Position numbers and translations under genes: made by a program | IMG/VR virus record: IMGVR_UViG_3300032334_002567 | Location: 124,001-188,000 of that record | DNA: 64,000 bases | Direction: 5' to 3' (one strand) | In this document: positions 1,569 to 46,794 of the stretch, piece after piece | Numbering within the stretch: position 1 is the stretch's first letter | Layout of the letters: every line of letters begins with the position of its first letter | Notes under the pieces: model-generated | What the model saw: only the letters and a program-made list of their open reading frames with translations | Told to the model about the DNA's origin: nothing | Databases searched by the model: none

Positions 1569-2975
1569 ATGAAAACCTGCGAAATCGTCGGCTTTGAACA
1601 TCTTCATCTTCATACGGATTTTTCATTATTAGATGGCTTCGGCCTCGTAGAGGAATACGCCCAACGTGCTCCTCAAATTAATCAGAAATTTCTTACTGTG
1701 AGCGATCACGGTATGCTTGGTGCTGTACCAAGACAAATAAAAGCATGTGAAAGAATAAATGAAAAGAAGGGTAAAGATACTCTATCCCCGATCTTTGCCG
1801 CAGAACTGTACATTAACCGCCTTCAACCAGAATCAAACTGTTTAGAAGACGTTCAAAAATTTGTTGCAGATTTAAATGAAGAAGAAAAAAATGAGATTAA
1901 AGCTAGTCCACATCTTTTAGCAATTGCTTACAACGATATTGGCTATAAGAACCTCGTCAGGCTCACTAGCTGGGGATGGACTAAAGGATTCTATAGAAAG
2001 CCAAGAGTCAATTATGAACAGCTTTTAAAGCATAAAGAAGGCTTGTTCTTCACTAGTTGCTGTTACAACAGTGAAGTAGGCAGGGCCTTTGATAAAGGCG
2101 GCGAAGAAGCAGCATATGCCGCTATTGAACGATATATAGAAATGGTTGGTAAAGACCATTATTTCTTGGAATTAATGCTTCTAGACTTTAAGAAGCAAAA
2201 GCCTTATGACGCTTTTATAATTAAAGCCCATGAAAAGTATGGTTTACCATTGATTTTGACTAATGATTGCCATTATTGCAATCAGGAAGACAGTAAGTTC
2301 CAAAGACTTATGTTGATGGTTCAAACAAATAGGACCGTTCAAGAAATACAAAGAGCTATAGCAGCAGATGATACTCAAGACTTTTTTGAGCTTCAGGATG
2401 CTAGCTTGTGGATGAAAAGCGAAGAAGAACTAAATCAAAAGTGGTTAGATCATTATTCTGACACAATACCCTATGAATTGTTCTGTGAAGCTAAGAAGAA
2501 CACTGTAAAGCTTTGTGAAAAAGCCAAAGGCGTTCAGCTAGATAGAAGCTTGAAACTTCCTAATCTTCCAGATGCAGATGAAGTTCTTAAAGACGAAGTT
2601 ATGAAGGGCTTCATTTCTAGAAATCTTCCAAAAACTAAAGAATATTTGGAAAGATTGAAAGAAGAATACTCCCTCATAACAAGGAAAGGCTTTTCTAGTT
2701 ACTTCTTAATACAAAAGAAGATGACAGATGAAGCAAGAAGAGTTTGTGCTAGCTTGTTAGGTTGGGGGGATGGTAGTCAAGCCGTGGGGCCTGGGCGGGG
2801 GAGTGCTGCTGGAGCTTTGACTTGTTATTGTTTAGGAATAACCAACGTAGACCCAGTAGCAGAAGGTCTTCTATTTAGTCGTTTTATGAGTGAGGCAAGA
2901 GGTGGAAGATCTATATCTTTAGAATTTAAGAATATGGATCCTTTGCCTGCTAACGAAGTTTTTGATGGAAACTGA
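1569..2975 (+). CDS. dnaE: DNA polymerase III alpha, N-terminal part (PHP domain plus start of palm)
   Basis: HLHLHTDFSLLDG, SDHG, GFYRKPR, TNDCHY, VGPGRGSAAG, LGITNVDP, LLFSRF; ends before the PDID catalytic motif. Confidence 0.92.
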   Translation: MKTCEIVGFEHLHLHTDFSLLDGFGLVEEYAQRAPQINQKFLTVSDHGMLGAVPRQIKACERINEKKGKDTLSPIFAAELYINRLQPESNCLEDVQKFVADLNEEEKNEIKASPHLLAIAYNDIGYKNLVRLTSWGWTKGFYRKPRVNYEQLLKHKEGLFFTSCCYNSEVGRAFDKGGEEAAYAAIERYIEMVGKDHYFLELMLLDFKKQKPYDAFIIKAHEKYGLPLILTNDCHYCNQEDSKFQRLMLMVQTNRTVQEIQRAIAADDTQDFFELQDASLWMKSEEELNQKWLDHYSDTIPYELFCEAKKNTVKLCEKAKGVQLDRSLKLPNLPDADEVLKDEVMKGFISRNLPKTKEYLERLKEEYSLITRKGFSSYFLIQKKMTDEARRVCASLLGWGDGSQAVGPGRGSAAGALTCYCLGITNVDPVAEGLLFSRFMSEARGGRSISLEFKNMDPLPANEVFDGN

Positions 2976-3690
2976 TAAGATTTATAATGAAAACTGCTTG
3001 GATACTATGTCTAGAATGCCAGATGGCTTCGTAGACTTGTCTTTAACTTCTCCTCCTTACAATATGAACCTAAGGATCAGAAACGGTTCTTATTGTTCTA
3101 GACAAATTATAAAGGAAGAGTTTAGTACAAAGTATTCTGAGTTCTCTGACAATATACCTATAGAAGAGTTTTATTCTAATCATAAAGCTATTTTAGCTGA
3201 GCTTCTTAGGGTTTCTAAAATAGTATTTTATAATATATCAATTGTTACTGGCTCGAAACGTGCTTTTTTTAAAATTATGGGCGACTTTTCTGATAACATA
3301 AAAGATATGATTGTATGGGATAAAGGACATGCTCAGCCAGCAATGAAATATAATGTATTAAATAGGCAGTATGAATTAATTCTAGTTCTAGAGAAGCAGG
3401 AAAGTGCAATATCTAGAATGTTTGATAAGTGCAATTTTGCCAGAGGAACCTTGAATGATATTTGGCTGGTAAAGAAGCCTAAAAAAATATCAAAGGATCA
3501 CGCTGCGATATTTCCCGAAGAATTAGCATCAAAAATAATATCAAACTTTACTGATATTAACGACCTAGTTTATGATCCTTTTATGGGAAGTGGAACTACT
3601 GCGGTTGTGGCTAAAAACTTAAAGAGAAGGTATATCGGTAGCGAGATTAGTGAAAAATATTGTAATATAGCAAACGAAAGATTACTATAA
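2965..3690 (+). CDS. DNA methyltransferase (N4-C/N6-A, beta class)
   Basis: TSPPY catalytic motif followed by HAAIFP and DPFMGSGTT SAM-binding motif. Confidence 0.9.
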   Translation: METDKIYNENCLDTMSRMPDGFVDLSLTSPPYNMNLRIRNGSYCSRQIIKEEFSTKYSEFSDNIPIEEFYSNHKAILAELLRVSKIVFYNISIVTGSKRAFFKIMGDFSDNIKDMIVWDKGHAQPAMKYNVLNRQYELILVLEKQESAISRMFDKCNFARGTLNDIWLVKKPKKISKDHAAIFPEELASKIISNFTDINDLVYDPFMGSGTTAVVAKNLKRRYIGSEISEKYCNIANERLL

Positions 3691-3696
3691 ACTTTT

Positions 3697-4611
3697 TTAG
3701 TACTTGGGCATAAATGGGTTTCTAGGCATACGGTTTTCGCCACCCATATCTTCGTCTGAATAATCTTCATCGCCCATATCTTCTTCTTCATCGCCCATGT
3801 CTTCGTCGCCCATATCATCTTCTGAAGGTTCTTCGTCGCCCATGTCTTCATCGCCCATATCGTCTTCATCTTCGTCTGAGTAATCTTCATCGCCCATATC
3901 TTCATCGTTAGAGGCTGAGCAACCTTCGCTACCCTCTTCGTCCTCTTCATCGCCGTACTTTTCGCTTTCTTCATCGCTGTCCATACCAATAGGAGAGGCT
4001 ACCATTTCATTTAAAGCCTTGTCTATTTTTCTTGCATAGGATTCATCGCTTTCAATGAGCTTGGCTAAGACCGTAAATGACTCATTGTGGTTTAGCATTT
4101 CTACCAAGAAAGCTTCTAGCATTTTGTTTCTTTTAACATCTCTAACAAAGTTGGTAATGCTCTTTTCGCTGCACTTGCAAGCTTCGATCATATTTCTAGT
4201 TGCTTCTAATGCAAATGACTGACATTCTGAAGATTCATTTTTGATCATATTCTTGGTGAACTCAGCAAGAGAGAGTTTCTTTGTTTGCTTAACCCATTCT
4301 TCTACTGTGGTTTTTGGCCAAGACTTCTTCTCTTCTGGGTCGGCATCGACGTTTGGTTCATATCTTAGATTCTTGTCGCCCTTATAGACCAAGCCAGACT
4401 CATCTTCTTTATTTGGGTCTTTTGCATTGTCTCCACCAACATAAGGAGCGGGTTCCCCTACCGTTCCTTTTCCACCTGCATCTTTTGGCATTTCTGCTTT
4501 GCCTGGCTTTGTAACTCTGTTGCCTTCGTAGTCTGCTACCTTTGCAACCTTAGCCTTGGTTTGTACATTGCCATTTTGATCGATGTATTCTTGGAAAGTC
4601 TTAAACTTCAT
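3697..4611 (-). CDS. acidic-tailed hypothetical protein with CTS-like N-terminus (possible head core/internal protein)
   Basis: Starts MKFKTFQEYI; C-terminal DMGDE repeats; AGGAG RBS and ATATATA box upstream. Confidence 0.6.
   Translation of the reverse strand: MKFKTFQEYIDQNGNVQTKAKVAKVADYEGNRVTKPGKAEMPKDAGGKGTVGEPAPYVGGDNAKDPNKEDESGLVYKGDKNLRYEPNVDADPEEKKSWPKTTVEEWVKQTKKLSLAEFTKNMIKNESSECQSFALEATRNMIEACKCSEKSITNFVRDVKRNKMLEAFLVEMLNHNESFTVLAKLIESDESYARKIDKALNEMVASPIGMDSDEESEKYGDEEDEEGSEGCSASNDEDMGDEDYSDEDEDDMGDEDMGDEEPSEDDMGDEDMGDEEEDMGDEDYSDEDMGGENRMPRNPFMPKY
3737..3905 (-). repeat. imperfect coding repeats encoding (E)DMGDE
   Basis: Repeated TTC(A/G)TCGCCCAT(A/G)TC units on the plus strand. 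Confidence 0.75.
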
Positions 4612-4691
4612 GGGGAGTCTCCTTTTTCTGTATATATTGTGTACTAATTAATTTTTTTAGTTAAAAACGTTTTATTTTGATATATAAAATC

Positions 4692-5186
4692 ATGATATCT
4701 TTTAAAAGCTGGCTATTTGAAAACGATGCAGAGCACACAGAGACTTTAAAAAAAACGGGTTTCTGGGGCAAACAAGGAGCTGGCTGCATTATATTATCAA
4801 AAAGTACAGGTAGAATATTGTTGCCACATAGATCAAACAAAACCCTTGAGCCTAATACTTGGGGAGTTTGGGGTGGTGCTATAGACGGTGCAGAAAACCC
4901 ACAGATAGCAGCAAAAAGAGAGGTTGAAGAAGAGGCAGGATACTCTGGTCATGCCGCTATGGTGCCATTGTCTATTTTTCAGAAAAACGATTTTAAGTAT
5001 CACAACTTCTTAGCGATTGTGGATGAAGAATTCGTTCCACAACTTAACTGGGAAACACAAAACTATGTCTGGACAACTTTAGATGAACTTCCAAGTCCTC
5101 TCCATTTCGGTTTACAGTGGGTTTTATCTAGAGACAAAGGTAAAATTCAGAGTATTATAGATTCATTCAATTTAGTGCCCGCTTAA
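4692..5186 (+). CDS. Nudix hydrolase with CTS-like N-terminus
   Basis: Nudix box GGAIDGAENPQIAAKREVEEEAG; likely start MISFKSWLFE at 4692. Confidence 0.88.
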   Translation: MISFKSWLFENDAEHTETLKKTGFWGKQGAGCIILSKSTGRILLPHRSNKTLEPNTWGVWGGAIDGAENPQIAAKREVEEEAGYSGHAAMVPLSIFQKNDFKYHNFLAIVDEEFVPQLNWETQNYVWTTLDELPSPLHFGLQWVLSRDKGKIQSIIDSFNLVPA

Positions 5187-5215
5187 TATTTTATATTTGG
5201 CACTCTATTGGAGGT

Positions 5216-5440
5216 ATGCAAAAATATAATTGTACTATACCTGTAACTGGTGGTCCTATGTGTGGAGAGTCACTAGCCGTAAAAGATGGTAGAATTCCCA
5301 ATCATTTGCCTTTATTCTTTGAAGGCAAATTTTACTCATACAATCTGGTCATAGAGTCCACAGAAGATTGGACTAACATCTATTATCAATATTCTAATGA
5401 AGTTTTAGGAATTAATGTGGATAAAAGAAATCAATTATAA
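5216..5440 (+). CDS. hypothetical protein
   Basis: 74-aa ORF, GGAGG RBS. Confidence 0.55.
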   Translation: MQKYNCTIPVTGGPMCGESLAVKDGRIPNHLPLFFEGKFYSYNLVIESTEDWTNIYYQYSNEVLGINVDKRNQL

Positions 5441-5676
5441 GTTATTACTTTCATGGAATTAGACTTTACATTTGAGTAATCTGGCCCACCGAATGGGTTA
5501 GATTTTGCATTTGAGTAATCTGGCCCACCGAATGGGTTAGATTTCGCATTTGAGTAATTTGGTCCACCGAATGGATTATTGTTTACATGGTTTTTTGTTG
5601 TAATTTTTTTGCTACACATAACGTAGCTAATTAATATAACAAAAATGATAAGCATTACTATTTTTATTTTTTTCAT
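5431..5676 (-). CDS. small membrane-anchored protein with 13-aa tandem repeats
   Basis: N-terminal hydrophobic helix; three copies of NPFGGP(N/D)YSN(A/V)KS. Confidence 0.65.
   Translation of the reverse strand: MKKIKIVMLIIFVILISYVMCSKKITTKNHVNNNPFGGPNYSNAKSNPFGGPDYSNAKSNPFGGPDYSNVKSNSMKVITYN
5469..5578. repeat. 39-bp tandem repeat x3 (coding)
   Basis: CATTTGAGTAATCTGGCCCACCGAATGGGTTAGATTT units at about 5469, 5508 and 5547. Confidence 0.9.
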
Positions 5677-5708
5677 ATTTTATTTAGTTTGTAGCTTAAA
5701 TAATTATT

Positions 5709-6512
5709 ATGTTTAAATTGTGGCTTGAAAATGAAGAAAGTACTTGCACTTTAAAGATAAGCAAGCCTAATGCTAAAATACCTCATTATAACTTTAATTT
5801 GCCAGCAGGATTTACTTGTCCTTTTGCATCAAAATGTTTATCAAAAGCTGATCCAACAACTGGCAAGTTAACAGATGGACCTAATATAGATTTTAGGTGT
5901 TCTGCCGCTGGAGAAGAAGCTCGTTATCCACCTACAAGAGCACAGAGATGGAGTAACTTTGAAGCCTTGAAAGCTATAGGTTTAGACAATGTACCCAAAA
6001 TGGCAGATGCTATTGTACAGGCAATAAACCATAACTTACCAAGAAGTCATCGTACATTCAGGCTACATGCTAGTGGTGACTTCTTTAATAAGAACTATTT
6101 AAAAGCTTGGATAGAAGTTGCTCGTAGAATGCCAGATATTACTTTTTATACCTATACAAAGAGTATACCTTATATTTTAGAAAATCTACCATTACCGAAT
6201 AATTTTCTTGTGACTGTTTCCAAAGGTGGACAACAAGATGCTTTAATTGATAGGAATGGACTCAAATTTTCTGTAGTTGTTTTTAGTGAAGAAGAAGCGG
6301 CAAACTATGTTTGGCATGATAAGAGCGGCAAACAGCATGTAGGATTAGAAATTGATCATGACGATAGCCATGCTTGGAAAGATGACAAACCTTTTGCTCT
6401 ATTAATTCATGGAACACAACCAGCCGGTTCGCCCGCTTCTAAGGCTAAATCTGCACTTGCTGGAAAGGGTTCCTACGGAAAATCTAGCAATAATAGTAGT
6501 AAAACTACATAA
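5709..6512 (+). CDS. phage Gp88-like protein with CTS-like N-terminus
   Basis: LPAGFTCP..C..C, FRLHASGDF and FYTYTKS motifs typical of the Gp88 family; starts MFKLWLENEE. Confidence 0.7.
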   Translation: MFKLWLENEESTCTLKISKPNAKIPHYNFNLPAGFTCPFASKCLSKADPTTGKLTDGPNIDFRCSAAGEEARYPPTRAQRWSNFEALKAIGLDNVPKMADAIVQAINHNLPRSHRTFRLHASGDFFNKNYLKAWIEVARRMPDITFYTYTKSIPYILENLPLPNNFLVTVSKGGQQDALIDRNGLKFSVVVFSEEEAANYVWHDKSGKQHVGLEIDHDDSHAWKDDKPFALLIHGTQPAGSPASKAKSALAGKGSYGKSSNNSSKTT

Positions 6513-6996
6513 CTACTGTTTTAGGTTTGCTATTTTGAATTGCTGCCATAATATTTTGAGATTTGGTTGTCAAAATCTGGTTTGCAACTTGCTGTGAGAA
6601 GCCAGGTGAAATTGAATTCTGATTAACAGCATTCGTTGATTGTTGAGATATGTTTTCTTTTTCTTCTTCGCTCAAGTATTGCAATGTTTGATCTGAAACA
6701 TCAAAGTATGACATTACCGTTCTGTCTACTAAAGAAGGATCTCTATTTTGCGCTTTAGAAAGCATATTTTTTTTCGCCATTTCTGCCGCTTGTTTGATTG
6801 ATGATCTGCCAAACCATGCTTTTTTTGCTTGTGACGCACCCCTCAATAGTGCTGAGCCTAAAGTAAAGGCTGTGCTCATCCCAGAGGCATCAAGAGCAAG
6901 TTGACCAGCAGCACCAGCAATGGTTTTTACTGCACCCTGAGCGTCTTTTCTATATTGTAAAATATTAGACTCTATATATTCAGCAAAACTTTTCAT
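6505..6996 (-). CDS. hypothetical protein with CTS-like N-terminus
   Basis: Likely start MKSFAEYIES at 6996 (the longer ORF would overlap tmRNA); TAAATA box 5 nt upstream. Confidence 0.6.
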   Translation of the reverse strand: MKSFAEYIESNILQYRKDAQGAVKTIAGAAGQLALDASGMSTAFTLGSALLRGASQAKKAWFGRSSIKQAAEMAKKNMLSKAQNRDPSLVDRTVMSYFDVSDQTLQYLSEEEKENISQQSTNAVNQNSISPGFSQQVANQILTTKSQNIMAAIQNSKPKTVVM

Positions 6997-7054
6997 ATTC
7001 GTATTTATCCTTGGTTGGATAAAAATTGGCTGGAAAGACACCGCAAATTTAAAC

Positions 7055-7082
7055 TTTACAAGTGATTTTTTTGTGCTATACT
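7055..7082 (+). promoter_or_regulatory. sigma70-like promoter for tmRNA
   Basis: TTTACA-N16-TATACT with TGn extended -10, 12 nt before the tmRNA 5' end. Confidence 0.7.
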
Positions 7083-7094
7083 CATTTATTGTTA

Positions 7095-7444
7095 GGGGTC
7101 GCACTGGTATCGACGTAGTACAAGGAGATATTGGTGGCACGCCGAGGTTGATCGAAAGGCCTCGTAAAAATTCGATCACGTCTTAACTGACGAAGTTTCT
7201 TACGCAATGGCTGCCTGAGAAGGCAACCACAAACTTAGGAAGCCACGCAAGAAGCGTCCAAAAGTTTGTCGCAAAATCTTGCTGGTTTCAATTGGTCAAC
7301 TTAGTTGAAACGAGATTAATAGGTTGAAAAGATTCTTAGACTTTTGTTCGTTGTAGTCGAAAGAATCTTATGAACAACGAAACAAGCGTGTAGAGGCCAT
7401 ATTGAGTTTGCTTACGGACAGGGGTTCGACTCCCCTCGACTCCA
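7095..7444 (+). ncRNA. ssrA: tmRNA, tag peptide (A)DEVSYAMAA
   Basis: Acceptor stem GGGGTCG/CGACTCC with G3.U; T arm AGGGG-TTCGACT-CCCCT; pk1-like region then TAACT resume context; tag frame 7189-7218 ends MAA-TGA; 3' end reads CTA, so CCA is not encoded. Confidence 0.95.
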
Positions 7445-7446
7445 CT

Positions 7447-7482
7447 AAAAGGAGGACTACGAAAGTGGTCCTCCTTTTTTTT
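7447..7482 (+). terminator. rho-independent terminator after tmRNA
   Basis: AAAAGGAGGACTAC-GAAA-GTGGTCCTCCTTTT followed by a T run. Confidence 0.85.
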
Positions 7483-7566
7483 CCATTTACTTCTCAATAT
7501 ACCCCTTTATTTTCATATATAATATAGGTGCAATGAATGCACTGCTTTTTAAAAAGGAGTTTAATT

Positions 7567-8208
7567 ATGGCAGCTACAACAACAGAAGGAACCGGTGCCG
7601 GTTCAGCAGGTAAATATAATCCATTAATCATTAATGGAAAAGTTAAGGATGTAAACGTTTCTCGTAATGCTCTAGATATGTATAGAGGTTATTTGAGTGT
7701 CGATGGTCTTGATCTAATGAATCCTATTGCTACTATTACAGGTGATTTGGATGTTACGGGCGACATTGAAGCCACAGGTTATGTTCGTGGGCACTTAGCA
7801 GGTCAATTGTTAAATACTGCTTTCTGGACATTCGATAATGGTGTTATAGTATGCTCAAACACTTCTTTTACAGATGTTGCTAGCGTATCATACACACCAG
7901 TATCAGCAACATCAAAGTTGTTAATTGAATATCATGCTATGTATACTGTTAGTGGTAGTTTGGGAGACAGCTTTAGATCAAGACTAACACTTGATGGAAA
8001 TCAACTTACTTGGAGGGACCAAGCATTCTATAATGGTGCAGGCGGCGGAACTAGAAGCGGTGTTTTATTCCCAATTTCTATGGTTTATACAAACAGCAAT
8101 GTTGCTCTCAAGACTATAAGAGCACAGGCTGCAAGAGTTAGTGCTGATGATAGCGTATCTCTTGATACAACATCTGCTTACTTAAGAATATCTGAATATG
8201 CTCGCTAA
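7567..8208 (+). CDS. putative virion structural / fibre-like protein
   Basis: Start MAATTTEGTGAGS after AGGAG; G/T/S-rich, beta-rich C-terminal domain ending LRISEY; TATATA box upstream. Confidence 0.5.
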   Translation: MAATTTEGTGAGSAGKYNPLIINGKVKDVNVSRNALDMYRGYLSVDGLDLMNPIATITGDLDVTGDIEATGYVRGHLAGQLLNTAFWTFDNGVIVCSNTSFTDVASVSYTPVSATSKLLIEYHAMYTVSGSLGDSFRSRLTLDGNQLTWRDQAFYNGAGGGTRSGVLFPISMVYTNSNVALKTIRAQAARVSADDSVSLDTTSAYLRISEYAR

Positions 8209-8232
8209 AAAATCTTAGTTTTTAAGAATTTT

Positions 8233-8266
8233 AAACACCCGGCCCAAAAGGTCGGGTGTTTTTTTG
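8233..8266 (+). terminator. rho-independent terminator
   Basis: AAACACCCGGCC-CAAAA-GGTCGGGTGTTT followed by a T run. Confidence 0.8.
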
Positions 8267-8316
8267 TAGCTGATCTTAAAAGTGTAAAGTATTTACTATT
8301 AATATTTTGTAAATAA

Positions 8317-8388
8317 TGCGAGGTAGCATAACGGTAATGCAGCAAACTGTTAATTTGTAAAATGTCAGTTCGACTCTGACCTTCGCAG
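8317..8388 (+). tRNA. tRNA-Asn(GTT)
   Basis: Acceptor TGCGAGG/CTTCGCA; anticodon arm GCAAA-CTGTTAA-TTTGT; T arm GTCAG-TTCGACT-CTGAC; no encoded CCA. Confidence 0.92.
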
Positions 8389-8435
8389 TAATTTTTTAAA
8401 TATTGGCACGAATTAATATAATATGGAAGGACACG

Positions 8436-9011
8436 ATGCGACATAGCTCTTTGGAAAAAGCATATAAAGACATACAAACAACCAGTTTAGATTCAACGCC
8501 GATTGTCAGCAATATTTACGGCGTTGAAGTGCGAAGACCAACAGTTCATAACGATCACCGTGGTCGGTTATTTGAAGTCTTTCCTGGCACCAACACCACA
8601 GATATTTTTTGGGATAAACCTGTAGTCTATTGTTACATGTTTAGTATTCGGGCAAACCAAATTAAAGGATGGGGTTTACACGAGCATAAAGATGACCGCT
8701 ACACTTTAATCAAAGGAGAAGTACTTAATGTGCTTTTTGATGCTCGTCCTGATTCGCCCACCTACTTAAAGACACAAAATGTATACCTCAGCGAACAGGG
8801 AAACCGTTCGTTAAAAATACCAACAGGAGTTTGGCATTGTAATATAAATATTTCTGATACCGAAACCCTGTTGGTGAACCATCCTACCGAAGTTTACAAA
8901 CATGAGGCGCCAGATAGATTGCTATTACCTTGGAATTCACCTGAAATACCAGTTGATTTAAAAAAATATTTTCCTATCCAACAAATGCAGCATGAACAAT
9001 GTTCGTGTTAA
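8436..9011 (+). CDS. rmlC: dTDP-4-dehydrorhamnose 3,5-epimerase-like cupin
   Basis: DHRGRLFE, KGWGLH, DARPDSPTY and IPTGVWH motifs. Confidence 0.75.
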   Translation: MRHSSLEKAYKDIQTTSLDSTPIVSNIYGVEVRRPTVHNDHRGRLFEVFPGTNTTDIFWDKPVVYCYMFSIRANQIKGWGLHEHKDDRYTLIKGEVLNVLFDARPDSPTYLKTQNVYLSEQGNRSLKIPTGVWHCNINISDTETLLVNHPTEVYKHEAPDRLLLPWNSPEIPVDLKKYFPIQQMQHEQCSC

Positions 9012-9022
9012 AGAGAATAAGC

Positions 9023-9712
9023 ATGGTAATTGCATCTATATTAATTCCGACTCATAACCATGGTGAACTCATCAATTTCGCTGTACAGTCAGTTCTAGAA
9101 CAAACTGTACAAGACTTTGAATTGTTTATTATTGGGGACGGTCCAACAAAAGAAACACGTGTCGCTGCTCAAGCTCTGGTAAACGATAAGGTTAAATACG
9201 AAGAATTTCCTAAAGCAGGACGAACCGGCGAACCACATCGTCATCATGTAATAACAAAAAAAACGACGGGCAAATATATTTTCTATTTAAGCGATGATGA
9301 TATTTGGACCAAACGACACCTTGAAACAATGCTACAAGCTCTTCAGTCGGGAAACTTTTGTCACTCAAAATATATTGAAGTCATGGGAAAACCTCGCCAT
9401 GAACACTTGTTACCAAATGACAAGAAGCTGTTAATTAAACAAAATTTCAACTTCATTCCACTTTCTTGTGGTGCACATAGTAGAGGTTTATACGCTAAAC
9501 TTAAAGAAGGATGGACTGAGACACCAGAAAAATACCATACCGATCATTATATGTGGAAAAAACTGGTTTCTCACCCTGATTGCCTTTCGACAAGTTCAAA
9601 ACATACAACTGTTATAAATTTTCCTAGCAAAAACAGGATGAATGAGAGTATTGATTCACGCAAGCAAGAGATAGAAAAGTGGTTAGCAGAAAATACCCAA
9701 ACAATTGCGTGA
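9023..9712 (+). CDS. glycosyltransferase family 2
   Basis: SILIPTHN, SVLEQT, IGDG, YLSDDD. Confidence 0.85.
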   Translation: MVIASILIPTHNHGELINFAVQSVLEQTVQDFELFIIGDGPTKETRVAAQALVNDKVKYEEFPKAGRTGEPHRHHVITKKTTGKYIFYLSDDDIWTKRHLETMLQALQSGNFCHSKYIEVMGKPRHEHLLPNDKKLLIKQNFNFIPLSCGAHSRGLYAKLKEGWTETPEKYHTDHYMWKKLVSHPDCLSTSSKHTTVINFPSKNRMNESIDSRKQEIEKWLAENTQTIA

Positions 9713-9794
9713 AATGCTCATCAATTTGCTATTATTGGCATTGATTTTTTAATTTTATTTCATTAGAATATATCGTTCGGAGGCTGACGCAAGT

Positions 9795-9865
9795 GCGGAA
9801 ATAGTTTAATGGTAGAACTACCGTCTCCAAAGCGGTTGGTGAGGGTTCGATTCCTTCTTTCCGTG
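9795..9865 (+). tRNA. tRNA-Trp(CCA)
   Basis: Acceptor GCGGAAA/TTTCCGT; anticodon arm ACCGT-CTCCAAA-GCGGT; T arm GAGGG-TTCGATT-CCTTC. Confidence 0.92.
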
Positions 9866-9997
9866 CTTTTGGTGATTTTCCTGAGCGGTCAAAAATCACT
9901 CACTACTTTTAAAACACAGGTTAAAAGGAGAAAAAGAAAAAACAAAAAAGTTTTAATCTCTATATAATATAGGTTCTTTTACATGGAGGTTTAGATC

Positions 9998-10192
9998 ATG
10001 ATTCACAGATTTTTTTTAGTGCTTGCTAGAACAATAGATCACAGGGTGGGAAAAACAGATTCAGATAAGCCAGACATACCTGTTTTAACAATGCAAGAGG
10101 CATTGATATCTTTTTTCATTAAGTTTTTTATTGTTTTAGTTAATCTTATTACTTGTAGCTTTGTAATAGCAAATATCATACGTCACTGGTAA
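9998..10192 (+). CDS. small membrane protein
   Basis: GGAGG RBS, C-terminal hydrophobic helix, TATATA box upstream. Confidence 0.55.
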   Translation: MIHRFFLVLARTIDHRVGKTDSDKPDIPVLTMQEALISFFIKFFIVLVNLITCSFVIANIIRHW

Positions 10193-10922
10193 GATATTTA
10201 ATTAATTCTTCTCTTGATTTGATGCCTTTATATTTTAATTCTGGCTCTTTCATTTTCATCAAGGAGGAGCACAGAGATTTTTTCTTTATATCTTTTTCGT
10301 CTATAAGGTATTGTCTTAATATGAATAAGCAAAAATGTTGCTCTGGAAAAGCCACCGTTACTTGACGTTCTATTTTAACAAAGACACATGGGTTTGATGC
10401 ATCAAATTCTTTTGTTTTAAACCTAGGATGAAAATTGTATTTTTTTTCGTGTACTATGCTCCATACAAATCTTTCAAAAATTCCTTTGTATATCATTGCT
10501 TCCACAACTTTTCTACTATTGTGTAGGCTCATGGGAACAGGAGCGTGTATTTCATCAAAGTTTTTACCAACTTTTTCTGATGGTAGCCAACCACTTGGAA
10601 AGCAAACATGTGCACTCGCCATCCAATCTTTTTCGCCATCTAGCCTGTGTATAATTAGATCTTCGTCTATTTCTTTTGCTAGGCTCAGATAATCCGCAGA
10701 CTTAGTTTCTACTGGGTAGTTTAGCTTTATAAAATTAAAGCAAGTATCGTATATTTCTTTTGTGACATTAGATTCAAAAAAATATTCTTGATTGTTAAGA
10801 GCTTCTTTTTTTTCTTTATGCAGCTCAAAGCAGTCAGATTTATTTTTTTCAAATATTTCTTCTGTTTTAATTTTTTTTAGATCTGGAAGTGTGCTGAATC
10901 CATGTTCATAAGCATGATACAT
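10176..10922 (-). CDS. DUF3445 / heme-dependent oxidative N-demethylase alpha-like protein
   Basis: VCFPSGW...EKVG...IHAPVP, R.VW and KIERQ motifs. Confidence 0.7.
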   Translation of the reverse strand: MYHAYEHGFSTLPDLKKIKTEEIFEKNKSDCFELHKEKKEALNNQEYFFESNVTKEIYDTCFNFIKLNYPVETKSADYLSLAKEIDEDLIIHRLDGEKDWMASAHVCFPSGWLPSEKVGKNFDEIHAPVPMSLHNSRKVVEAMIYKGIFERFVWSIVHEKKYNFHPRFKTKEFDASNPCVFVKIERQVTVAFPEQHFCLFILRQYLIDEKDIKKKSLCSSLMKMKEPELKYKGIKSREELIKYLTSDV

Positions 10923-10923
10923 G

Positions 10924-11742
10924 TCAACTTACTCCGATTTGCCTGTACCATTTTGTTAGTATCCACTTTTCTCCCTCTATCACGGGATCGCCGGAGTGTA
11001 GTGTTGCTTCGTCTAATTCGCCCTTTGAGTTGCAATATTCAAAATAAATAGCGGAGCCTTTCTTTGGATAGAAGGTGGAGCCTACTCTTGGGAAAGAAGT
11101 TGTACCACCAGACTCTAGATCTGTTAAATAAACAATTAAGGTTGCAACTCTGTTTCTTTTATCTTTTTTGAGCACAGGGTCATGGAAGTAATCAGTGTGT
11201 GGTTTATATTCTTGTCCTGTTTGATAACGAAGTATTTGTAGCGGCTCAGTATCTTCTGGTTTATAATCTATAATTTCACATAATCTATCGTCTATTTGTC
11301 TTAAAAATTCACTTTCATTTCTATCGAAGTGTGTGCTTGAGCTTGTTCTAAATTCTGATACGTCTGGTTCGCCTTGTTGGTTAAATACTTTTGATTGTTG
11401 AACTTTATTTGCTGATATTTTTATTAATTCGTCGCATTGTCTGGTTGTTAGTACATCTTCTAAATAGCATATAAATGGTTTATTCATTTTGGAGACGATC
11501 CTGATTTCTCCATCTTTCAGTTTGACGAAGTTCTTAGACACATCTAATCTTGGTTTTTCATTTTCAAATGAATCATAGGTTACAACATCTTTTAAAAGTC
11601 TAGAGGCAGTATCTTTATCTAAGCCAGCATTCGTCATTGCAGTGACAACATTGCCCACATGCTCTCTGATCCACTGCATCCATTTTAGCTTTGCTTCTAA
11701 TTGTTCTTTTGGTTCCATTTTATTCTCCATTTTATTCTCCAT
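10924..11742 (-). CDS. 2OG-Fe(II) oxygenase, prolyl 4-hydroxylase-like
   Basis: RTSSS, EPLQILRY..GQEYKPHTDYF, YL.D...GG.T.FP, TLHSG.PV..GEKW. Confidence 0.9.
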   Translation of the reverse strand: MENKMENKMEPKEQLEAKLKWMQWIREHVGNVVTAMTNAGLDKDTASRLLKDVVTYDSFENEKPRLDVSKNFVKLKDGEIRIVSKMNKPFICYLEDVLTTRQCDELIKISANKVQQSKVFNQQGEPDVSEFRTSSSTHFDRNESEFLRQIDDRLCEIIDYKPEDTEPLQILRYQTGQEYKPHTDYFHDPVLKKDKRNRVATLIVYLTDLESGGTTSFPRVGSTFYPKKGSAIYFEYCNSKGELDEATLHSGDPVIEGEKWILTKWYRQIGVS

Positions 11743-11802
11743 TTGCTATATTATAGCAACTTTTGTTCTACAATAAAATAGCGAGATATACGTAAATACT
11801 AC

Positions 11803-11934
11803 ATGGAACCAGATCTATCTAAAAAAGATTATATTGCTATGATAATTTTATCAATAGTTATTAGCTCAATTGTGACGTTTATTCCATTTATTGTTCGTAT
11901 TTTGATCAATAAAATTTTTGATTTTCTTTTTTGA
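11803..11934 (+). CDS. 43-aa single-TM protein (not in the ORF track)
   Basis: MEPDLSKKDYIAMIILSIVISSIVTFIPFIVRILINKIFDFLF; TAAATA box 4 nt upstream. Confidence 0.55.
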   Translation: MEPDLSKKDYIAMIILSIVISSIVTFIPFIVRILINKIFDFLF

Positions 11935-11989
11935 TATTGCTGTTTTAACTTCTCAAGATATAATGCAAGAAAATTATATCTGGTGAAAT

Positions 11990-14710
11990 ATGCAATTGTC
12001 TGATATTTGCATCCAAAAATTGTCTGAGAAAAAACTAAATGATTTTGAACATAAAAAGCGTTTAAAGTGGGAGCTAGAAGAAGTCGCAGCAAAAGATAAA
12101 GAATCTTATTTCCTTAATCTTTACAAAAATAAAACCAGATATTCAAAGAATCAAAATAATCTTCTAATTTGCTGGTTGCTAGGAATAGCACCAGATTTTG
12201 ATATAAAGAATGATCCAAATTGTTTTTATGGTGAATATCCTGATATTGATGTAGATTTTATTCCTCAAATAAGAAATTACATAAAAGAAGATTGGGCTCC
12301 CAAGTTTTTTGGTGAAGAATACGTATGCAATATAGGAAATTATACTACTTTTGGCATTAAGTCTGCACTTATAGACATGGCTAGAGTCCACGGAGAAAGC
12401 AGAGAAGAAGTTTTGGGTTTAACCAAAAACCTTGATGCAAAGGATGACGAAGGTAAGGCGATGACTTGGGACGCAGCGATGAAGCTGTATCCTGAATTGA
12501 AAAAATATTGTGAAACTCATCCAGAAATCGCTGAGTCTGCTAAGAAATTATTAAATAGAAATCGTGGAATGGGCGTTCACGCCGGAGGTTTGATTATATC
12601 AAAAACTCCACTTCCTGATTTGGTTCCTCTTGTAAAAAGGAAAGACAATCCACAGGCTTCATCTTGGGTAGAAGGATTGCATGGGCAAGATTTACAGCCC
12701 GTAGGCCTTGTTAAGTTTGATTTACTTGTTGTATCTAACTTGTTGCAGATTGCCAAGTGTTGCGAGTTGGTCAAGAAGAGGCATAAAGTAAATAACATAT
12801 GTGCCTTAGAAGGACAATCAGATTGGAGTGACGTTGAAGCTTGGCGTAATGATTCTTTAGCTTTAGAAATGGCAAACTCTGGCGATCTTAAGGGGATATT
12901 CCAGTTTGATAGTGAAACTGTACGCAGCATGTGTCGTTCTGGTGGTGTGGATAGGTTTGAAGATCTTGTAGCTTATACAAGCTTAAATAGACCTGGCCCA
13001 CTGAACATGAAGATGCAAGAAAGATACATTGAACGCAAAAGAGGAAGAGAAAACTTTTTCCTGCATCCAATACTTCAGCCAATCTTAGGTAAGACTTATG
13101 GCGTTATTCTCTATCAAGAACAGGTAATGAGAATATTAAATGCTGTTGGTGAAATACCCTTGAAAGATTGTGAGTTGGTTCGTAAAGCTATTTCCAAAAA
13201 GAAGATTGAAAGCTTTATCAAATATAAAGAAATATTCATAATTAATGGTCAAAAGAATCTAGAGGTTAGCGAGAAAGAAATAGAACATCTTTGGAACCAA
13301 ATTGAAGCTTTTGCTGAATATGGATTTAACTTAAGCCATGCCGTTGCTTATACATACATTTCTGCTTATTTACTTTACCTAAAATCTCATTATCCGCATG
13401 AGTTCTATACAAGCATATTAAGTTGTGAGAATTTAAGCGACAAGATAAAAGATTATAAGATGGAAGCTAAAATTCATGGTGTTAATGTGGTTAGAGTTGA
13501 CGTCAATAATTCTAGAGTAGACTTTGATCTTCAAGGTGATGAAATATATTTTGGTCTTTCAAATGTAAAGGGGATTGGCGAGGGTCCTTCTCAAAGGATA
13601 GTTGACCAACAGCCTTATAAAAACTTTGAAGATTTTCTCGACAGATTCGGCACAGACGCCAGCGTTCTTAAGCCTTTGATTGGATTGAGATGTTTCCAAG
13701 AAAGAGATCCCATAACTCTTTGGAAGTTCTCTGAAGTTTATAAAAACTTTGTAAAGAAGAACGAAGACAAGAAAAAAAGATTTTTGCTTTCTTTGGAAAG
13801 GTATGAGAGTGAGTTTAAGGATTTATTCCCAGATGAAACTATGTCTTTGGCTGAGGTAGAAGAGGCGATTGGTTCTGGCCATTGGTCAAGATATGACGTT
13901 GATGAAGAGCGTTATGTTGAAACAAATACAGAATGCTCTGCTGATGAAGAAGGAGCAGTTTCAAAAACAGTTAACGGCACAGTTGAATTAGATTGTGGAC
14001 TTACGATAGAAAAAGAAGTTATTAAGTACTACAAAAAGACGAAGATTAAAAAGTCTTTTAATAAGCTGAATGAGCTTAAAAAGCTTATCCAAAAAAGAAA
14101 AAGAACTATAGAGAAGCACAAAAAGGTAGAAGGCGACAAGCCAACTTTGAATAACTTTAATCCTCATGAACAGTTCGTGAATGAGGATTTAGAGTTAGAA
14201 CTGCAAGATATTATTGCCTGTGAAAATAAGTATTACGGTTTTTCATGGATACATCCCTTAGAAAATAGTCCAGATTATAGTGGTAATTTGACTTTTGATA
14301 ACCTTAGAAATTCTACGGATGTATCAGTTGGCCCAGTTGAAATTCGTGTAATAAAAGCGAATAAAACAAAAAGCAAAAAAGGCACTGTATACTTCCAAGT
14401 GTCAGCTGAAGACGTCACGGGCCAAGAAAACAAGATAATAGCTTGGCAGGATGATTGGGATCGTTGGTCTGAAGAATTGTCACAGGATAACTTACTTAGG
14501 ATACGGCTTCAGCCACCTTCTAATGGCTTTTCTACTTTTACTTTAGAAAGTAACAGGGGGAGTGCTAAGTGGAAAAACATTAAGAAGTATGAAGACAAAA
14601 AAGATGACATAAGAGTTGTTGTTTTGAGAAAAGGCGAGACTCAAAATAAGATTGTCTCTGATGTTGATTTGATTGAACAGTTTGAAGAATGTATTATGGA
14701 GAAAAAATGA
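11990..14710 (+). CDS. dnaE: DNA polymerase III alpha, C-terminal part (catalytic palm, fingers, HhH, OB)
   Basis: YPDIDVDF, HAGG, GLVKFDLL, GIFQF, RPGP, YQEQVM, YGFNLSHAVAY, GLSNVKGIG. Confidence 0.93.
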   Translation: MQLSDICIQKLSEKKLNDFEHKKRLKWELEEVAAKDKESYFLNLYKNKTRYSKNQNNLLICWLLGIAPDFDIKNDPNCFYGEYPDIDVDFIPQIRNYIKEDWAPKFFGEEYVCNIGNYTTFGIKSALIDMARVHGESREEVLGLTKNLDAKDDEGKAMTWDAAMKLYPELKKYCETHPEIAESAKKLLNRNRGMGVHAGGLIISKTPLPDLVPLVKRKDNPQASSWVEGLHGQDLQPVGLVKFDLLVVSNLLQIAKCCELVKKRHKVNNICALEGQSDWSDVEAWRNDSLALEMANSGDLKGIFQFDSETVRSMCRSGGVDRFEDLVAYTSLNRPGPLNMKMQERYIERKRGRENFFLHPILQPILGKTYGVILYQEQVMRILNAVGEIPLKDCELVRKAISKKKIESFIKYKEIFIINGQKNLEVSEKEIEHLWNQIEAFAEYGFNLSHAVAYTYISAYLLYLKSHYPHEFYTSILSCENLSDKIKDYKMEAKIHGVNVVRVDVNNSRVDFDLQGDEIYFGLSNVKGIGEGPSQRIVDQQPYKNFEDFLDRFGTDASVLKPLIGLRCFQERDPITLWKFSEVYKNFVKKNEDKKKRFLLSLERYESEFKDLFPDETMSLAEVEEAIGSGHWSRYDVDEERYVETNTECSADEEGAVSKTVNGTVELDCGLTIEKEVIKYYKKTKIKKSFNKLNELKKLIQKRKRTIEKHKKVEGDKPTLNNFNPHEQFVNEDLELELQDIIACENKYYGFSWIHPLENSPDYSGNLTFDNLRNSTDVSVGPVEIRVIKANKTKSKKGTVYFQVSAEDVTGQENKIIAWQDDWDRWSEELSQDNLLRIRLQPPSNGFSTFTLESNRGSAKWKNIKKYEDKKDDIRVVVLRKGETQNKIVSDVDLIEQFEECIMEKK

Positions 14711-15201
14711 ACGAAAGTAATGAATTAATAATTGATCAAACAAATTTTGATCAATACTTTAGAGATTGTAGACTCAGTCGTCCTTCTCGTGGCGACGTTA
14801 TGGCTAGGTTTACAGCCATGGCTGATTTTGTAGATGGTCGAATGAAGAAAGATATAATAGATCTTCTTTTTTATAAGCGAGATAAGGTCAATGCCGCTGT
14901 GCAGGTTATGATAAAGTTGGGTGGTGCTACTGAAAGAGAAGCTCTTAGAATTTGTAAAGAGATTTGTTTAGACCTTGCAAATGGAATGAATCCTGAAGAA
15001 GTTGAAACTAAGACTTATACATATCAAATGGAGATCTTTTATTACACAAAAAAGGAGTATGTGCCAATAAATGATCCGCATTGGTCGATAATTAGCATAG
15101 CTAATTTGGACGAGTTTTTAGACAAGTCCGGCCAAAGGCTAAGAATGGAATCAAAGCTTAAGATAGATGATAAAGGAGAAGATGAGGAGAAAATTCGGTG
15201 A
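14707..15201 (+). CDS. hypothetical protein
   Basis: ATGA overlap with the dnaE stop; GGAG RBS. Confidence 0.6.
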   Translation: MNESNELIIDQTNFDQYFRDCRLSRPSRGDVMARFTAMADFVDGRMKKDIIDLLFYKRDKVNAAVQVMIKLGGATEREALRICKEICLDLANGMNPEEVETKTYTYQMEIFYYTKKEYVPINDPHWSIISIANLDEFLDKSGQRLRMESKLKIDDKGEDEEKIR

Positions 15202-16333: not shown

Positions 16334-16759
16334 ATGAACAATAAAAGGCTGTTCGATCTTATAGTTCTAGGCTTATGGTTATTAATGGCTTCAGTTTTTT
16401 ATGTTCAAAATGGAATAAGAACGCAAGACAGAATACCCATACCAGAAAAATCATCTTTCGTATTGCAGCCCAACAAAGAATTAGAGATCAAAAAAATATC
16501 TGTTATAACTGGTGATCTTTTTGAGCTTACTCTTAAGGATCAAAGCTCCAGTAGAATTTTTGCCAAACTTCCTATTGATGCTGCCGATAATTCAAAGGGA
16601 AGAGTCGTCAAAATTCTTAGAGAGGTTGTCTCACCAAGAGTTTTTTTGGTTGAAAAAAAGCAAGATGGTAAGTGGATCGCAAATATTTTTTTTCTTTTAG
16701 AAAATCAAGAATCGAACCTAGTTAATTGGTTAGAACAAAACAATTTGGTATCTGAATGA
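16334..16759 (+). CDS. membrane-anchored hypothetical protein
   Basis: N-terminal TM helix. Confidence 0.55.
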   Translation: MNNKRLFDLIVLGLWLLMASVFYVQNGIRTQDRIPIPEKSSFVLQPNKELEIKKISVITGDLFELTLKDQSSSRIFAKLPIDAADNSKGRVVKILREVVSPRVFLVEKKQDGKWIANIFFLLENQESNLVNWLEQNNLVSE

Positions 16760-46784: not shown

Positions 46785-46794
46785 AATTTTTGTA

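What the first reader, a model, noticed from the sequence alone, without database searches (positions are those of the whole stretch)
1569..14710. Intein-less split DnaE with a duplicated, degenerate palm segment, halves about 9 kb apart
Seen: the first ORF has an intact-looking PHP domain and the GRGS/LGIT.VDP/LLF.RF part of the palm, then stops just before PDID. The second ORF carries PDIDVDF and KFDLL (the catalytic Asp residues) plus the rest. Its N-terminus repeats a decayed copy of the overlap: RLKWELEEV...SYFL...LICWLLGI versus RLKEEYSLI...SYFL...LTCYCLGI, without GRGS. I see no intein-like termini or intron. The halves are separated by a methyltransferase, tmRNA, tRNAs and sugar genes. 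Known: cyanobacterial split DnaE is rejoined by a split intein, and GRGS plus the downstream Arg residues contact the incoming dNTP. Inference: duplication followed by complementary loss produced a two-subunit polymerase whose active site assembles in trans, or a separate PHP proofreading subunit.
Basis: partly seen in the sequence, partly recalled or inferred. Interest (0 to 1): 0.72.

Follow-up and report, generated by a model that had tools for sequence, protein, structure and literature searches.

The report
Two-gene phage DnaE polymerase, no intein
This huge phage encodes its DnaE-type DNA polymerase as two separate genes cut through the catalytic core. Each piece keeps a worn-down copy of the other's edge, there is no intein to rejoin them, and the arrangement is shared by a very large group of uncultured phages, a few of which appear to have fused the gene back together.

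Summary

- **The two genes.** ORF 1569-2975 (468 aa) carries the PHP domain and the first part of the palm, including an invariant GRGS. ORF 11990-14710 (906 aa) carries PDIDVDF, KFD, the fingers and the HhH domain.
- **The overlap.** Both pieces cover the same roughly 110 residues of an intact relative. The C-half head is a degenerate copy without GRGS. The N-half tail (RSISLEF) looks like a degenerate copy of the DIDVDF strand. Both remnants are conserved.
- **No rejoining element.** No intein, intron or recombinase was found. The same Pfam model does detect true split inteins at another site in relatives.
- **Distribution.** The split is ancient and widespread. 98 of the best 150 cluster representatives (50% identity) are C-half type, and only 5 are intact. 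The spacer ranges from 2 nt to 9.9 kb.
- **Assembly in trans.** A complex prediction scores 0.82 against 0.00 for the best control. GRGS, the tail, the head and the DxD strand all lie in the interface.
- **Re-fusion.** Trees of both parts place the few close intact forms inside the split radiation (AU p 0.018). This points to one fission and a later re-fusion.

Best reading: fission by partial tandem duplication and complementary loss, giving a non-covalent heterodimer with a composite active site. It is a new variant of a known kind.

The parts
1569..2975 (+). N-half gene (468 aa): PHP domain plus the first part of the palm
   Evidence: ORF. Pfam PHP 1.7e-32 and DNA_pol3_alpha profile 3-98/260. 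Aligns to M. tuberculosis DnaE1 residues 4-412. More than 100 stand-alone homologues of 440-490 aa.
1599..2177 (+). PHP domain (N-half residues 11-203)
   Evidence: The expected metal ligands are invariant or nearly so in alignment A1: H15, D22, H47, E79, H115, C164, D233, H235. H13 lies in a well-conserved consensus stretch.
2586..2900 (+). Palm N-part (N-half residues 340-444): the full copy of the duplicated segment
   Evidence: 55% identical to residues 293-433 of the intact LR756511 DnaE.
2793..2804 (+). GRGS motif (N-half residues 409-412), the GS signature of the nucleotidyltransferase fold
   Evidence: G407, R410, G411 and S412 are invariant in 32 N-halves. The motif lies in the predicted interface with the C-half.
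2889..2975 (+). Conserved N-half tail SEARGGRSISLEFKNMDPLP... The stretch SISLEF sits where DIDVDF would be and looks like a degenerate copy of that strand
   Evidence: Mean conservation 0.83 across 68 N-halves. pLDDT below 50 when the N-half is folded alone. Residues 437-461 are in the interface in the complex model. Homology to the strand is inferred from position and hydrophobic pattern only.
2976..11989 (.). 9.0 kb spacer of accessory genes. It is not part of the polymerase and is a variable insertion hotspot
   Evidence: Gene content. Spacers in relatives measure 2 nt, about 0.34-0.4, 3.2, 4.1, 5.8, 6.9 and 9.9 kb. A near-identical strain lacks 10308-10919.
11990..14710 (+). C-half gene (906 aa): head, catalytic palm, fingers, HhH and C-terminal region
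   Evidence: ORF. Pfam. Residues 83-554 align to Taq Pol III alpha 461-926. The 120 listed hits lack PHP.
11990..12232 (+). C-half head (residues 1-81): degenerate, shortened copy of the palm N-part without GRGS
   Evidence: E 5e-5 against the correct place in the intact DnaE. hhalign E 1.8e-6. Conservation about 0.65, with R24, E28, E31, N54, N56 and N57 invariant. Helical with pLDDT 86-94. Residues 27-58 are in the predicted interface.
12239..12259 (+). PDIDVDF strand (C-half residues 84-90). D85 and D87 correspond to E. coli D401 and D403
   Evidence: P84, D85, D87 and D89 are invariant. The register comes from the alignment to 2hnh, residue 398 = C-half 82.
12713..12721 (+). KFD (C-half residues 242-244), the third catalytic carboxylate D244
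   Evidence: K242, F243 and D244 are invariant.
12749..13255 (+). Fingers domain (C-half residues 254-422)
   Evidence: Pfam PF17657, 1.1e-38.
13478..13699 (+). HhH domain (C-half residues 497-570)
   Evidence: Pfam PF14579, 2e-14.

Best explanation
**What it is.** This is a genuine two-gene DnaE-type (C-family) DNA polymerase with no intein. It is shared by a large clade of mostly huge, uncultured phages.

**How it arose (inferred).** An ancestral intact dnaE acquired a partial tandem duplication of about 110 codons, running from the helix before the GS loop to the DxD strand. The reading frame was then broken between the two copies.

**What each copy kept.**
- The first copy, at the end of the N-half, kept strand 1, the GRGS loop and the following helices. 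Its DxD strand lost the aspartates and now reads SIxLEF.
- The second copy, at the start of the C-half, kept the catalytic PDIDVDF. It lost the GS loop.

**How it works (inferred).**
- The two proteins assemble non-covalently into one polymerase.
- The nucleotidyltransferase active site is composite. The triphosphate-binding GS motif and the PHP exonuclease come from the N-half. The three carboxylates, fingers and DNA-binding parts come from the C-half.
- The redundant remnants (N tail and C head) are retained because they form part of the interface between subunits.

**What the gap has become.** The space between the genes tolerates insertions and has filled with different accessory genes in different lineages. 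Here it holds 9 kb, including a tmRNA and two tRNAs.

**Shown versus inferred.**
- Shown: the anatomy, conservation, distribution, absence of intein signatures, and a predicted interface that beats its controls.
- Inferred: the order of evolutionary events, the docking role of the remnants, and activity in trans.
For: **Anatomy and the clean cut.** The cut is at Pfam PF07733 position 98/100.

**Overlap.** Both halves align to the same stretch of the intact LR756511 DnaE. Profile-to-profile comparison gives E 1.8e-6.

**Complementary invariance.** GRGS is invariant in 32 N-halves. PDIDVD and KFD are invariant in 32 C-halves. The C-head lacks GxGS in every lineage examined.

**Remnants under constraint.** Tail conservation is 0.83. 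Head conservation is about 0.65, with invariant residues.

**Distribution.**
- More than 100 stand-alone N-halves were found.
- All 120 listed C-half hits lack PHP.
- 98 of the best 150 cluster representatives are C-half type, against 5 intact.
- The two halves are always in the same order and on the same strand. Spacers run from 2 nt to 9.9 kb.
- In the deep lineage L021 the halves are adjacent and sit between RecA and DnaB.

**No intein, intron or recombinase.**. The same intein model does find split-intein halves at another site in relatives.

**Assembly.**
- The complex prediction scores ipSAE 0.82 against 0.00 for the best of 3 controls. That mark was reached by 58 of 80 solved complexes and 2 of 110 mismatched pairs.
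- The interface includes N-half 402-415 and 437-461, and C-half 27-58 and 76-98.
- Folded alone, the C-half catalytic sheet (residues 81-91 and 210-244) and the N-half tail have pLDDT below 50.

**Assembly is sound.** An independent Logan contig spans 9700-14800 with no differences.
Against: - No experiment shows that the halves bind or are active.
- The complex score may reflect the model's memory of intact DnaE structures. The tool returns no coordinates, so where the head and tail sit is unknown.
- Homology of the N tail to the DxD strand rests on about 6 residues and its position.
- The genome also encodes a PolA-like protein and DnaB elsewhere. The split DnaE may therefore not be the only replicase, or the main one.
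- No beta-clamp was detected.
- The structure alignments were shallow (32 rows each).
Confidence: 0.8

Rival explanations
1. Two independent enzymes. The N-half is a free-standing PHP 3'-5' exonuclease whose palm fragment is only scaffolding. The C-half is a self-sufficient polymerase. They may associate as polymerase and proofreader, but the active site is not composite.
For: The PHP metal ligands are conserved. The C-half holds all three carboxylates plus fingers and HhH. The C-half has its own helical head in place of the palm N-part.
Against: The C-head lacks the GS loop in every lineage. That loop is a universal signature of the nucleotidyltransferase fold (PMC11646218). GRGS and R438/R444 are invariant in the N-half although it has no carboxylates. 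The predicted interface contains the GRGS loop. The C-half catalytic sheet is poorly predicted alone.
Confidence: 0.1
2. The pieces are rejoined. This could happen by a cryptic split intein, a trans-spliced intron, or programmed excision of the spacer DNA that restores one gene.
For: Inteins are common in this family, and true split inteins occur at another site. The N-half ends in N and the head contains PN-C.
Against: No Intein or Hint hit was found in the tail or head, even at E up to 10. The tail has only about 25 residues beyond the homologous part, and the head is homologous to DnaE itself. Joining the pieces would duplicate the segment. No group I or II intron and no recombinase were found in the window region. 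No contig joint across the C-half start was seen. Spacer content is unrelated between lineages.
Confidence: 0.03
3. A dead gene. An insertion disrupted dnaE, and the pieces are decaying while another polymerase replicates the phage.
For: A PolA-like gene exists elsewhere in the genome. The overlap looks 'decayed'.
Against: Both ORFs are intact. Homologues are 55-98% identical across hundreds of independent assemblies, and the catalytic motifs are invariant. The split persists through a radiation spanning down to 34% identity.
Confidence: 0.02
4. Misassembly or a chimeric contig.
For: The source is a metagenome.
Against: A second assembler's 46-kb contig is identical over 9700-14800. The same architecture appears in more than 10 independent contigs from other samples.
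Confidence: 0.01

Closest known systems
Split minimal DNA polymerase III alpha of group 2.2 jumbo phages (Iyer, Anantharaman, Krishnan, Burroughs, Aravind 2021, Viruses 13:63, PMC7824862)
   Same: A phage C-family catalytic module encoded as two separate proteins by distant genes. The cut lies between the N-terminal NTP-binding part and the C-terminal Mg- and template-binding part. The authors propose that the two reconstitute one enzyme.
   Different: That version is minimal, without PHP or the other Pol III domains, and it accompanies a family B polymerase. The protein here is a full-size DnaE with PHP, fingers, HhH and a C-terminal region. No PolB is found in this genome. Its closest relatives include intact DnaEs. 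No overlapping duplicated remnants were reported in the passages I read. I did not compare the sequences directly.
Cyanobacterial split DnaE joined by a split intein (Synechocystis and Nostoc DnaE; from my own knowledge)
   Same: DnaE is encoded by two distant genes.
   Different: There the cut is in the fingers, at the FAEY/CFNKSH site, and the pieces are ligated by protein trans-splicing. Here the cut is in the palm before PDIDVDF, and no intein parts are present. Relatives of this phage carry in-frame inteins near C-half residue 450, at the FAEYGFN stretch; by my recollection of the Synechocystis junction this is the same site. They also carry true split inteins at about residue 339.
Other split phage DNA polymerases: family B-like in chimalliviruses and phiKZ-like phages, and family A in some cyanophages and OM43 phages (titles found)
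   Same: A replicative polymerase in two polypeptides that work as a complex.
   Different: They belong to different polymerase families and folds. I did not read these papers beyond their titles and abstracts.
Gene fission by duplication and complementary degeneration (described for Drosophila monkey-king; from my own knowledge)
   Same: A partial duplicate pair in which each copy loses a different part, leaving two genes that together cover the ancestor and overlap in a shared segment.
   Different: Here the process cuts through an enzyme's catalytic core. The products must therefore reassemble rather than specialise.

Membership tests
C-family DNA polymerase, DnaE type (Pol III alpha) | N-terminal PHP domain | tested here: met
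   PF02811, 1.7e-32, in the N-half. Aligns to the PHP of M. tuberculosis DnaE1.
C-family DNA polymerase, DnaE type (Pol III alpha) | Pol-beta-like nucleotidyltransferase palm with a GS motif and three carboxylates | tested here: met
   GRGS is in the N-half. D85, D87 and D244 are in the C-half. All are invariant. They lie on two chains.
C-family DNA polymerase, DnaE type (Pol III alpha) | Fingers and HhH DNA-binding domains | tested here: met
   PF17657 1.1e-38 and PF14579 2e-14. The model matches DnaE structures at Z 19-23.5.
C-family DNA polymerase, DnaE type (Pol III alpha) | Catalytic subunit is a single polypeptide | tested here: not met
   There are two ORFs 9 kb apart, and two ORFs in 98 of 150 related cluster representatives.
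C-family DNA polymerase, DnaE type (Pol III alpha) | DNA polymerase activity | not testable with these tools
   Needs biochemistry.
Split-intein DnaE (cyanobacterial type) | Intein N-part at the end of the first piece and intein C-part at the start of the second | tested here: not met
   No Intein_splicing or Hint hit in either piece, nor in the tail or head alone at E up to 10. The same model detects both parts in P0335/P0351 and in P0329/P0333/P0349.
Split-intein DnaE (cyanobacterial type) | Exteins abut without overlap, so that splicing gives one normal protein | tested here: not met
   The pieces overlap by about 110 ancestral residues.
Split minimal Pol III alpha of group 2.2 jumbo phages | Cut between the NTP-binding and Mg-binding parts of the catalytic module | tested here: met
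   The cut falls between GRGS plus its helices and PDIDVDF. The description of the family is in PMC7824862.
Split minimal Pol III alpha of group 2.2 jumbo phages | Minimal: no PHP or other Pol III domains, and accompanies a family B polymerase | tested here: not met
   PHP, fingers and HhH are present. No PF00136 hit in the 381-kb record.
Genes in pieces made by a homing-endonuclease gene insertion | Homing endonuclease gene, or its remnant, between the pieces | tested here: not met
   No HNH, GIY-YIG or LAGLIDADG hit in the spacer ORFs. In the deep lineage L021 the pieces are 2 nt apart.

The most novel reading that the evidence does not exclude
A replicative polymerase underwent an ancient fission through the core of its nucleotidyltransferase fold by partial tandem duplication. 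The redundant, catalytically dead remnants (the head helices of the C-half and the pseudo-DxD strand of the N-half) were then recruited as the docking module that holds a composite active site together. The fission was later reversed by a precise re-fusion in one sublineage. This would be a natural, phylogenetically resolved case of reversible gene fission in an essential enzyme.
Probability: 0.45. Interest if true: 0.75.

Novelty: new variant of a known kind. Interest (0 to 1): 0.62.

Why it matters
- **A trans-assembled active site.** The finding suggests that a C-family polymerase active site can be built from two chains, with the triphosphate-binding GS loop and the metal-binding carboxylates on different polypeptides. 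This gives a natural system for asking how the Pol III alpha palm assembles.
- **A clear evolutionary route.** The path runs from duplication, through complementary loss and mutual dependence, to occasional re-fusion. The intermediates and the outcome are still readable in the sequences, which makes it a good example of constructive neutral evolution in an essential enzyme.
- **Annotation.** Hundreds of metagenomic genes called 'DNA polymerase III alpha' are really halves. Pipelines that score huge-phage replication modules or completeness should expect two genes (three in some lineages), up to about 10 kb apart in the loci examined.
- **Protein engineering.** A pair of polymerase fragments that appears to associate on its own, without an intein, may be useful.

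Tried and rejected
- **Direct BLASTP of N-half against C-half.** E 0.58, not significant on its own. Homology of the head had to be shown through the intact relative and through profiles instead.
- **Pfam on the head alone.** No hit, even at E 10.
- **ARAGORN.** It did not find the tmRNA. Rfam did.
- **Replisome context.**
  - No beta-clamp (PF00712) and no PolB in the record.
  - Pfam and PHROGs gave nothing for the conserved ORFs flanking the halves.
- **Promoter and terminator scan.** Promoter-like sites are not above chance (48 found, 49.7 expected). No statement about separate transcription units can be made.
- **The conserved minus-strand spacer gene 3697-4611.** No family, a poor model, and no convincing Atlas neighbour. 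It is not evidently the agent of the split.
- **Literature.** Four searches found no description of a full-length split DnaE with overlap in phages. This shows absence from the held library, not proof of novelty.
- **Coordinates.** The complex tool gives no coordinates or residue pairs. I could not decide which copy of the duplicated helices occupies the canonical palm position.
- **Structural alignment of the isolated C-half model.** The head was covered only in two rows with rmsd about 21 A. This is too loose to place it.
- **L012.** N-half matches fall in several reading frames, so I left it out of all the analyses.


Full report
**1. What is in the window**

The window is bases 124001-188000 of a 381-kb IMG/VR virus record, estimated 79% complete. 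G+C is about 35% with a steady positive GC skew.

ORF 1569-2975 (468 aa) and ORF 11990-14710 (906 aa) are the only two matches to the Pol III alpha catalytic family in the whole record.

| Piece | Pfam family | Residues | Profile positions |
|---|---|---|---|
| N-half | PHP | 11-203 | not applicable |
| N-half | PF07733 | 340-444 | 3-98 of 260 |
| C-half | PF07733 | 82-246 | 100-259 of 260 |
| C-half | finger | 254-422 | not applicable |
| C-half | HHH_6 | 497-570 | not applicable |

The N-half aligns to M. tuberculosis DnaE1 residues 4-412. The C-half aligns from residue 82-83 to E. coli residue 398 and Taq residue 461 onward. That register makes D85 and D87 the counterparts of E. coli D401 and D403, and D244 the third carboxylate.

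**2. The overlap is real**

- N-half against C-half directly is not significant (E 0.58).
- A 595-kb uncultured phage, LR756511.1, has an intact 1179-aa DnaE (L001:6957-10496).
- N-half 300-444 aligns to its residues 293-433 at 55% identity.
- C-half 20-136 aligns to its residues 349-489.
- The 80-aa head alone finds residues 349-414 with E 5e-5.
- A profile of 30 C-heads against a profile of 27 N-half ends gives hhalign E 1.8e-6.

The head is shorter than its counterpart by the 15-16 residues that hold GPGRGS, and by a further 5-6 residues near LLFSRF.

The N-half also keeps something extra. After LLFSRF-MSEAR comes GGRSISLEFKNMDPLP. This tail is strongly conserved across 68 N-halves (0.83). 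Its SISLEF sits where DIDVDF would be and has the same hydrophobic pattern. Calling it homologous to that strand is an inference, because the stretch is short.

In total, about 110 ancestral residues are represented twice. The first copy keeps GRGS but has no aspartates. The second copy keeps the aspartates but has no GS loop.

**3. It is not decay**

- GRGS (G407, R410, G411, S412), R438 and R444 are invariant in 32 N-halves.
- P84, D85, D87, D89, K242, F243 and D244 are invariant in 32 C-halves.
- The head has mean conservation of about 0.65 over 99 C-halves. R24, E28, E31, N54, N56 and N57 are invariant.

**4. It is not an artefact, and nothing rejoins the pieces**

- A Logan contig of 46 kb from the best-holding run spans 9700-14800 without a difference. 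This may be the source sample, but it comes from a different assembler. A related strain in another run has the same C-half start.
- Pfam finds no intein or Hint domain in either half. It finds nothing in the tail or head alone at E up to 10.
- Rfam finds no intron in the window.
- The spacer ORFs include no recombinase or homing endonuclease.

There is a positive control. In relatives, the same intein model finds the N part at the end of roughly 440-aa middle pieces, and the C part at the start of third pieces.

**5. The spacer**

The spacer contains the following genes:
- a N6/N4 methylase
- a conserved minus-strand gene with a long acidic tail
- NUDIX
- GP88
- a tmRNA
- tRNA-Asn
- an epimerase-like gene
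- a GT2 glycosyltransferase
- tRNA-Trp
- a 64-aa hydrophobic ORF
- a HODM-like gene
- a 2OG-Fe(II) oxygenase

In relatives the two halves are always in the same order and on the same strand, but the distance between them varies widely.

| Locus | Distance between halves |
|---|---|
| L021 | 2 nt |
| L011 | about 0.34 kb |
| L022 | about 0.4 kb |
| L013 | 3.2 kb |
| L014 | 4.1 kb |
| L020 | 5.8 kb |
| L015/L016 | 6.9 kb |
| this window | 9.0 kb |
| L019 | 9.9 kb |

Gene content is largely unrelated between lineages. A near-identical strain lacks 10308-10919. The gap therefore behaves as a tolerated insertion site.

**6. Distribution**

- A search limited to proteins of similar length returned more than 100 stand-alone N-halves at 67-98% identity.
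- All 120 listed C-half hits (55-94% identity) lack PHP.
- The best 150 cluster representatives (50% identity) break down as follows:
  - 98 are C-half type with their own head, reaching down to 34% identity.
  - 5 carry PHP: P0274, P0284, P0287 and P0327 are close, and P0380 is distant.
  - The rest are fragments or later pieces.
- Contigs reach 600 kb.
- GenBank phage genomes hold only one close relative, the intact LR756511.
- The deep lineages L021 and L022 show the same architecture. Their heads are less degenerate: TNRSHS in place of GPGRGS, with LLGISxIDPI retained. In L021 the pair lies between RecA and DnaB.

**7. Fission, then re-fusion**

- A tree of the C-part has 99 rows and 529 columns and is rooted on the distant intact P0380. 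It places LR756511, P0284 and P0274 inside nested, well-supported clades of split forms, with SH-aLRT values of 98, 99, 99 and 96.
- Forcing all intact forms to one side of a branch costs 120 log-likelihood units, AU p 0.018. The caveats are that the group was named after I had seen the tree, the search was quick, and there is a single outgroup.
- An independent N-part tree agrees. L021, L022 and L011 branch off first, and the intact trio sits inside.
- All split forms share the same boundaries and the same loss of the GS loop. One fission and one later re-fusion is therefore far more parsimonious than many parallel fissions.
- The junction in the trio (LLFSRFLSEAR|DDFPDADLDF in P0274) is N-like up to SEAR and C-like from there. 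A deletion between the pseudo-strand and the true strand would give exactly this.

**8. Assembly**

- The complex prediction used the N-half (468 aa) and C-half residues 1-530, with my own alignments.
- It scored ipSAE 0.82 in all three runs, against 0.00 for the best of 3 controls.
- That mark was reached by 58 of 80 solved complexes and 2 of 110 mismatched pairs.
- The tool warns that likeness to solved DnaE structures can produce such a pass from memory.
- The interface includes N-half 375-435 (with GRGS) and 437-461 (the tail). It also includes C-half 27-58 (the head), 76-111 (the DxD strand region) and 183-259.
- Folded alone, the C-half head is confidently helical. Its catalytic sheet (81-91, 190-201, 210-244) has pLDDT below 50.
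- Folded alone, the N-half tail and the GRGS loop have pLDDT below 50.

This fits a composite active site, with the remnants as interface elements. It does not prove it, and the tool returned no coordinates.

**9. Comparison with what is known**

- The closest precedent is the split minimal Pol III alpha of group 2.2 jumbo phages. It is cut at the same topological point, but it lacks PHP and the other domains and it accompanies PolB (PMC7824862).
- The cyanobacterial split DnaE uses a split intein in the fingers (from my own knowledge).
- The GS signature between strands 1 and 2, and the carboxylates on strands 2 and 5, define the nucleotidyltransferase core (PMC11646218). The cut here therefore runs through that core.
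- I found no paper describing this full-size, overlapping, intein-less split.

**10. Verdict**

The feature is a clade-wide trait and a new variant of a known kind (split phage polymerases). It adds two points of interest: conserved duplicated remnants, and an apparent reversal of the fission.

Noticed in passing
relatives P0335, P0351 (middle pieces); P0329, P0333, P0349 (third pieces): In some lineages the C-half is split again in the fingers, at about C-half residue 339. The Intein_splicing N part sits at the end of one piece and the C part at the start of the next. This gives a three-piece DnaE with one intein-less split and one split-intein split. The hits are below Pfam's gathering score but are consistent across proteins.
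   Followed up: partly
relatives; L015:11371-11906, L017, L007:8875-10001: In-frame inteins are very common in this family. 43 of 150 representatives have an insertion of more than 80 aa near C-half residue 450 (the FAEYGFN stretch). By my recollection this is the site of the cyanobacterial DnaE intein, which I did not check. Others lie at about 380-410, and in the PHP domain at about residue 77.
   Followed up: partly
relatives P0356, P0378, P0384, P0359 (head region, about residues 80-190): A beta-rich insertion of about 100 aa sits just before PDIDVDF. It ends in N but is followed by E or D, not by a nucleophile, and has no Pfam hit. It may be a degenerate intein-like element at the very site of the split. 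In L023 no N-half lies within 10 kb upstream.
   Followed up: partly
window 7095-7447 (+): A full-length tmRNA (Rfam 133.7 bits, model positions 1-374) followed by a strong terminator-like hairpin at 7447-7478. ARAGORN did not report it.
   Followed up: partly
window 46794-46909 (+): A SAM-I/IV riboswitch aptamer match (52.2 bits, gathering score 41.1) in a phage genome.
   Followed up: no
window 3697-4611 (-): A gene with a conserved 210-aa N-terminal part and a long acidic DEDMGDE-repeat tail. Homologues lie in the spacer of most split relatives (26-52% identity). It has no family and only a poor structure model.
   Followed up: partly
window 9998-10192 (+): A 64-aa hydrophobic ORF that is 87% identical in L015/L016, where it lies directly before the C-half. 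In the window, two minus-strand genes (HODM-like and 2OG oxygenase) sit between it and the C-half.
   Followed up: no
window 10308-10919: A related strain (run X3, about 90-95% identical) lacks this 610-bp stretch, most of the HODM-like gene. The spacer therefore varies even between close strains.
   Followed up: no
G000:C1:70677-75295 (outside the window; loci L018, L024): A second replication module. A short PolA-like ORF (436 aa, matching only positions 147-379 of PF00476) lies next to a 186-aa ORF and a DnaB-like helicase (536-aa open frame).
   Followed up: partly
window 16756-17883, 19805-20293, 23671-25278: A DHH-family phosphoesterase, a peptide deformylase and a TPP-dependent enzyme with all three TPP-enzyme domains are encoded downstream of the polymerase.
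   Followed up: no
L012:10001-11392: Matches to the N-half fall in several overlapping reading frames. The cause is either an indel-rich assembly or recoding. I left this locus out of all analyses.
   Followed up: no
L019, L020, L014, L017 (just upstream of the C-half): An AAA (PF00004) gene of about 320-350 aa and a gene of about 180 aa precede the C-half in several relatives. They could be clamp-loader-like partners. They are not in this position in the window.
   Followed up: no
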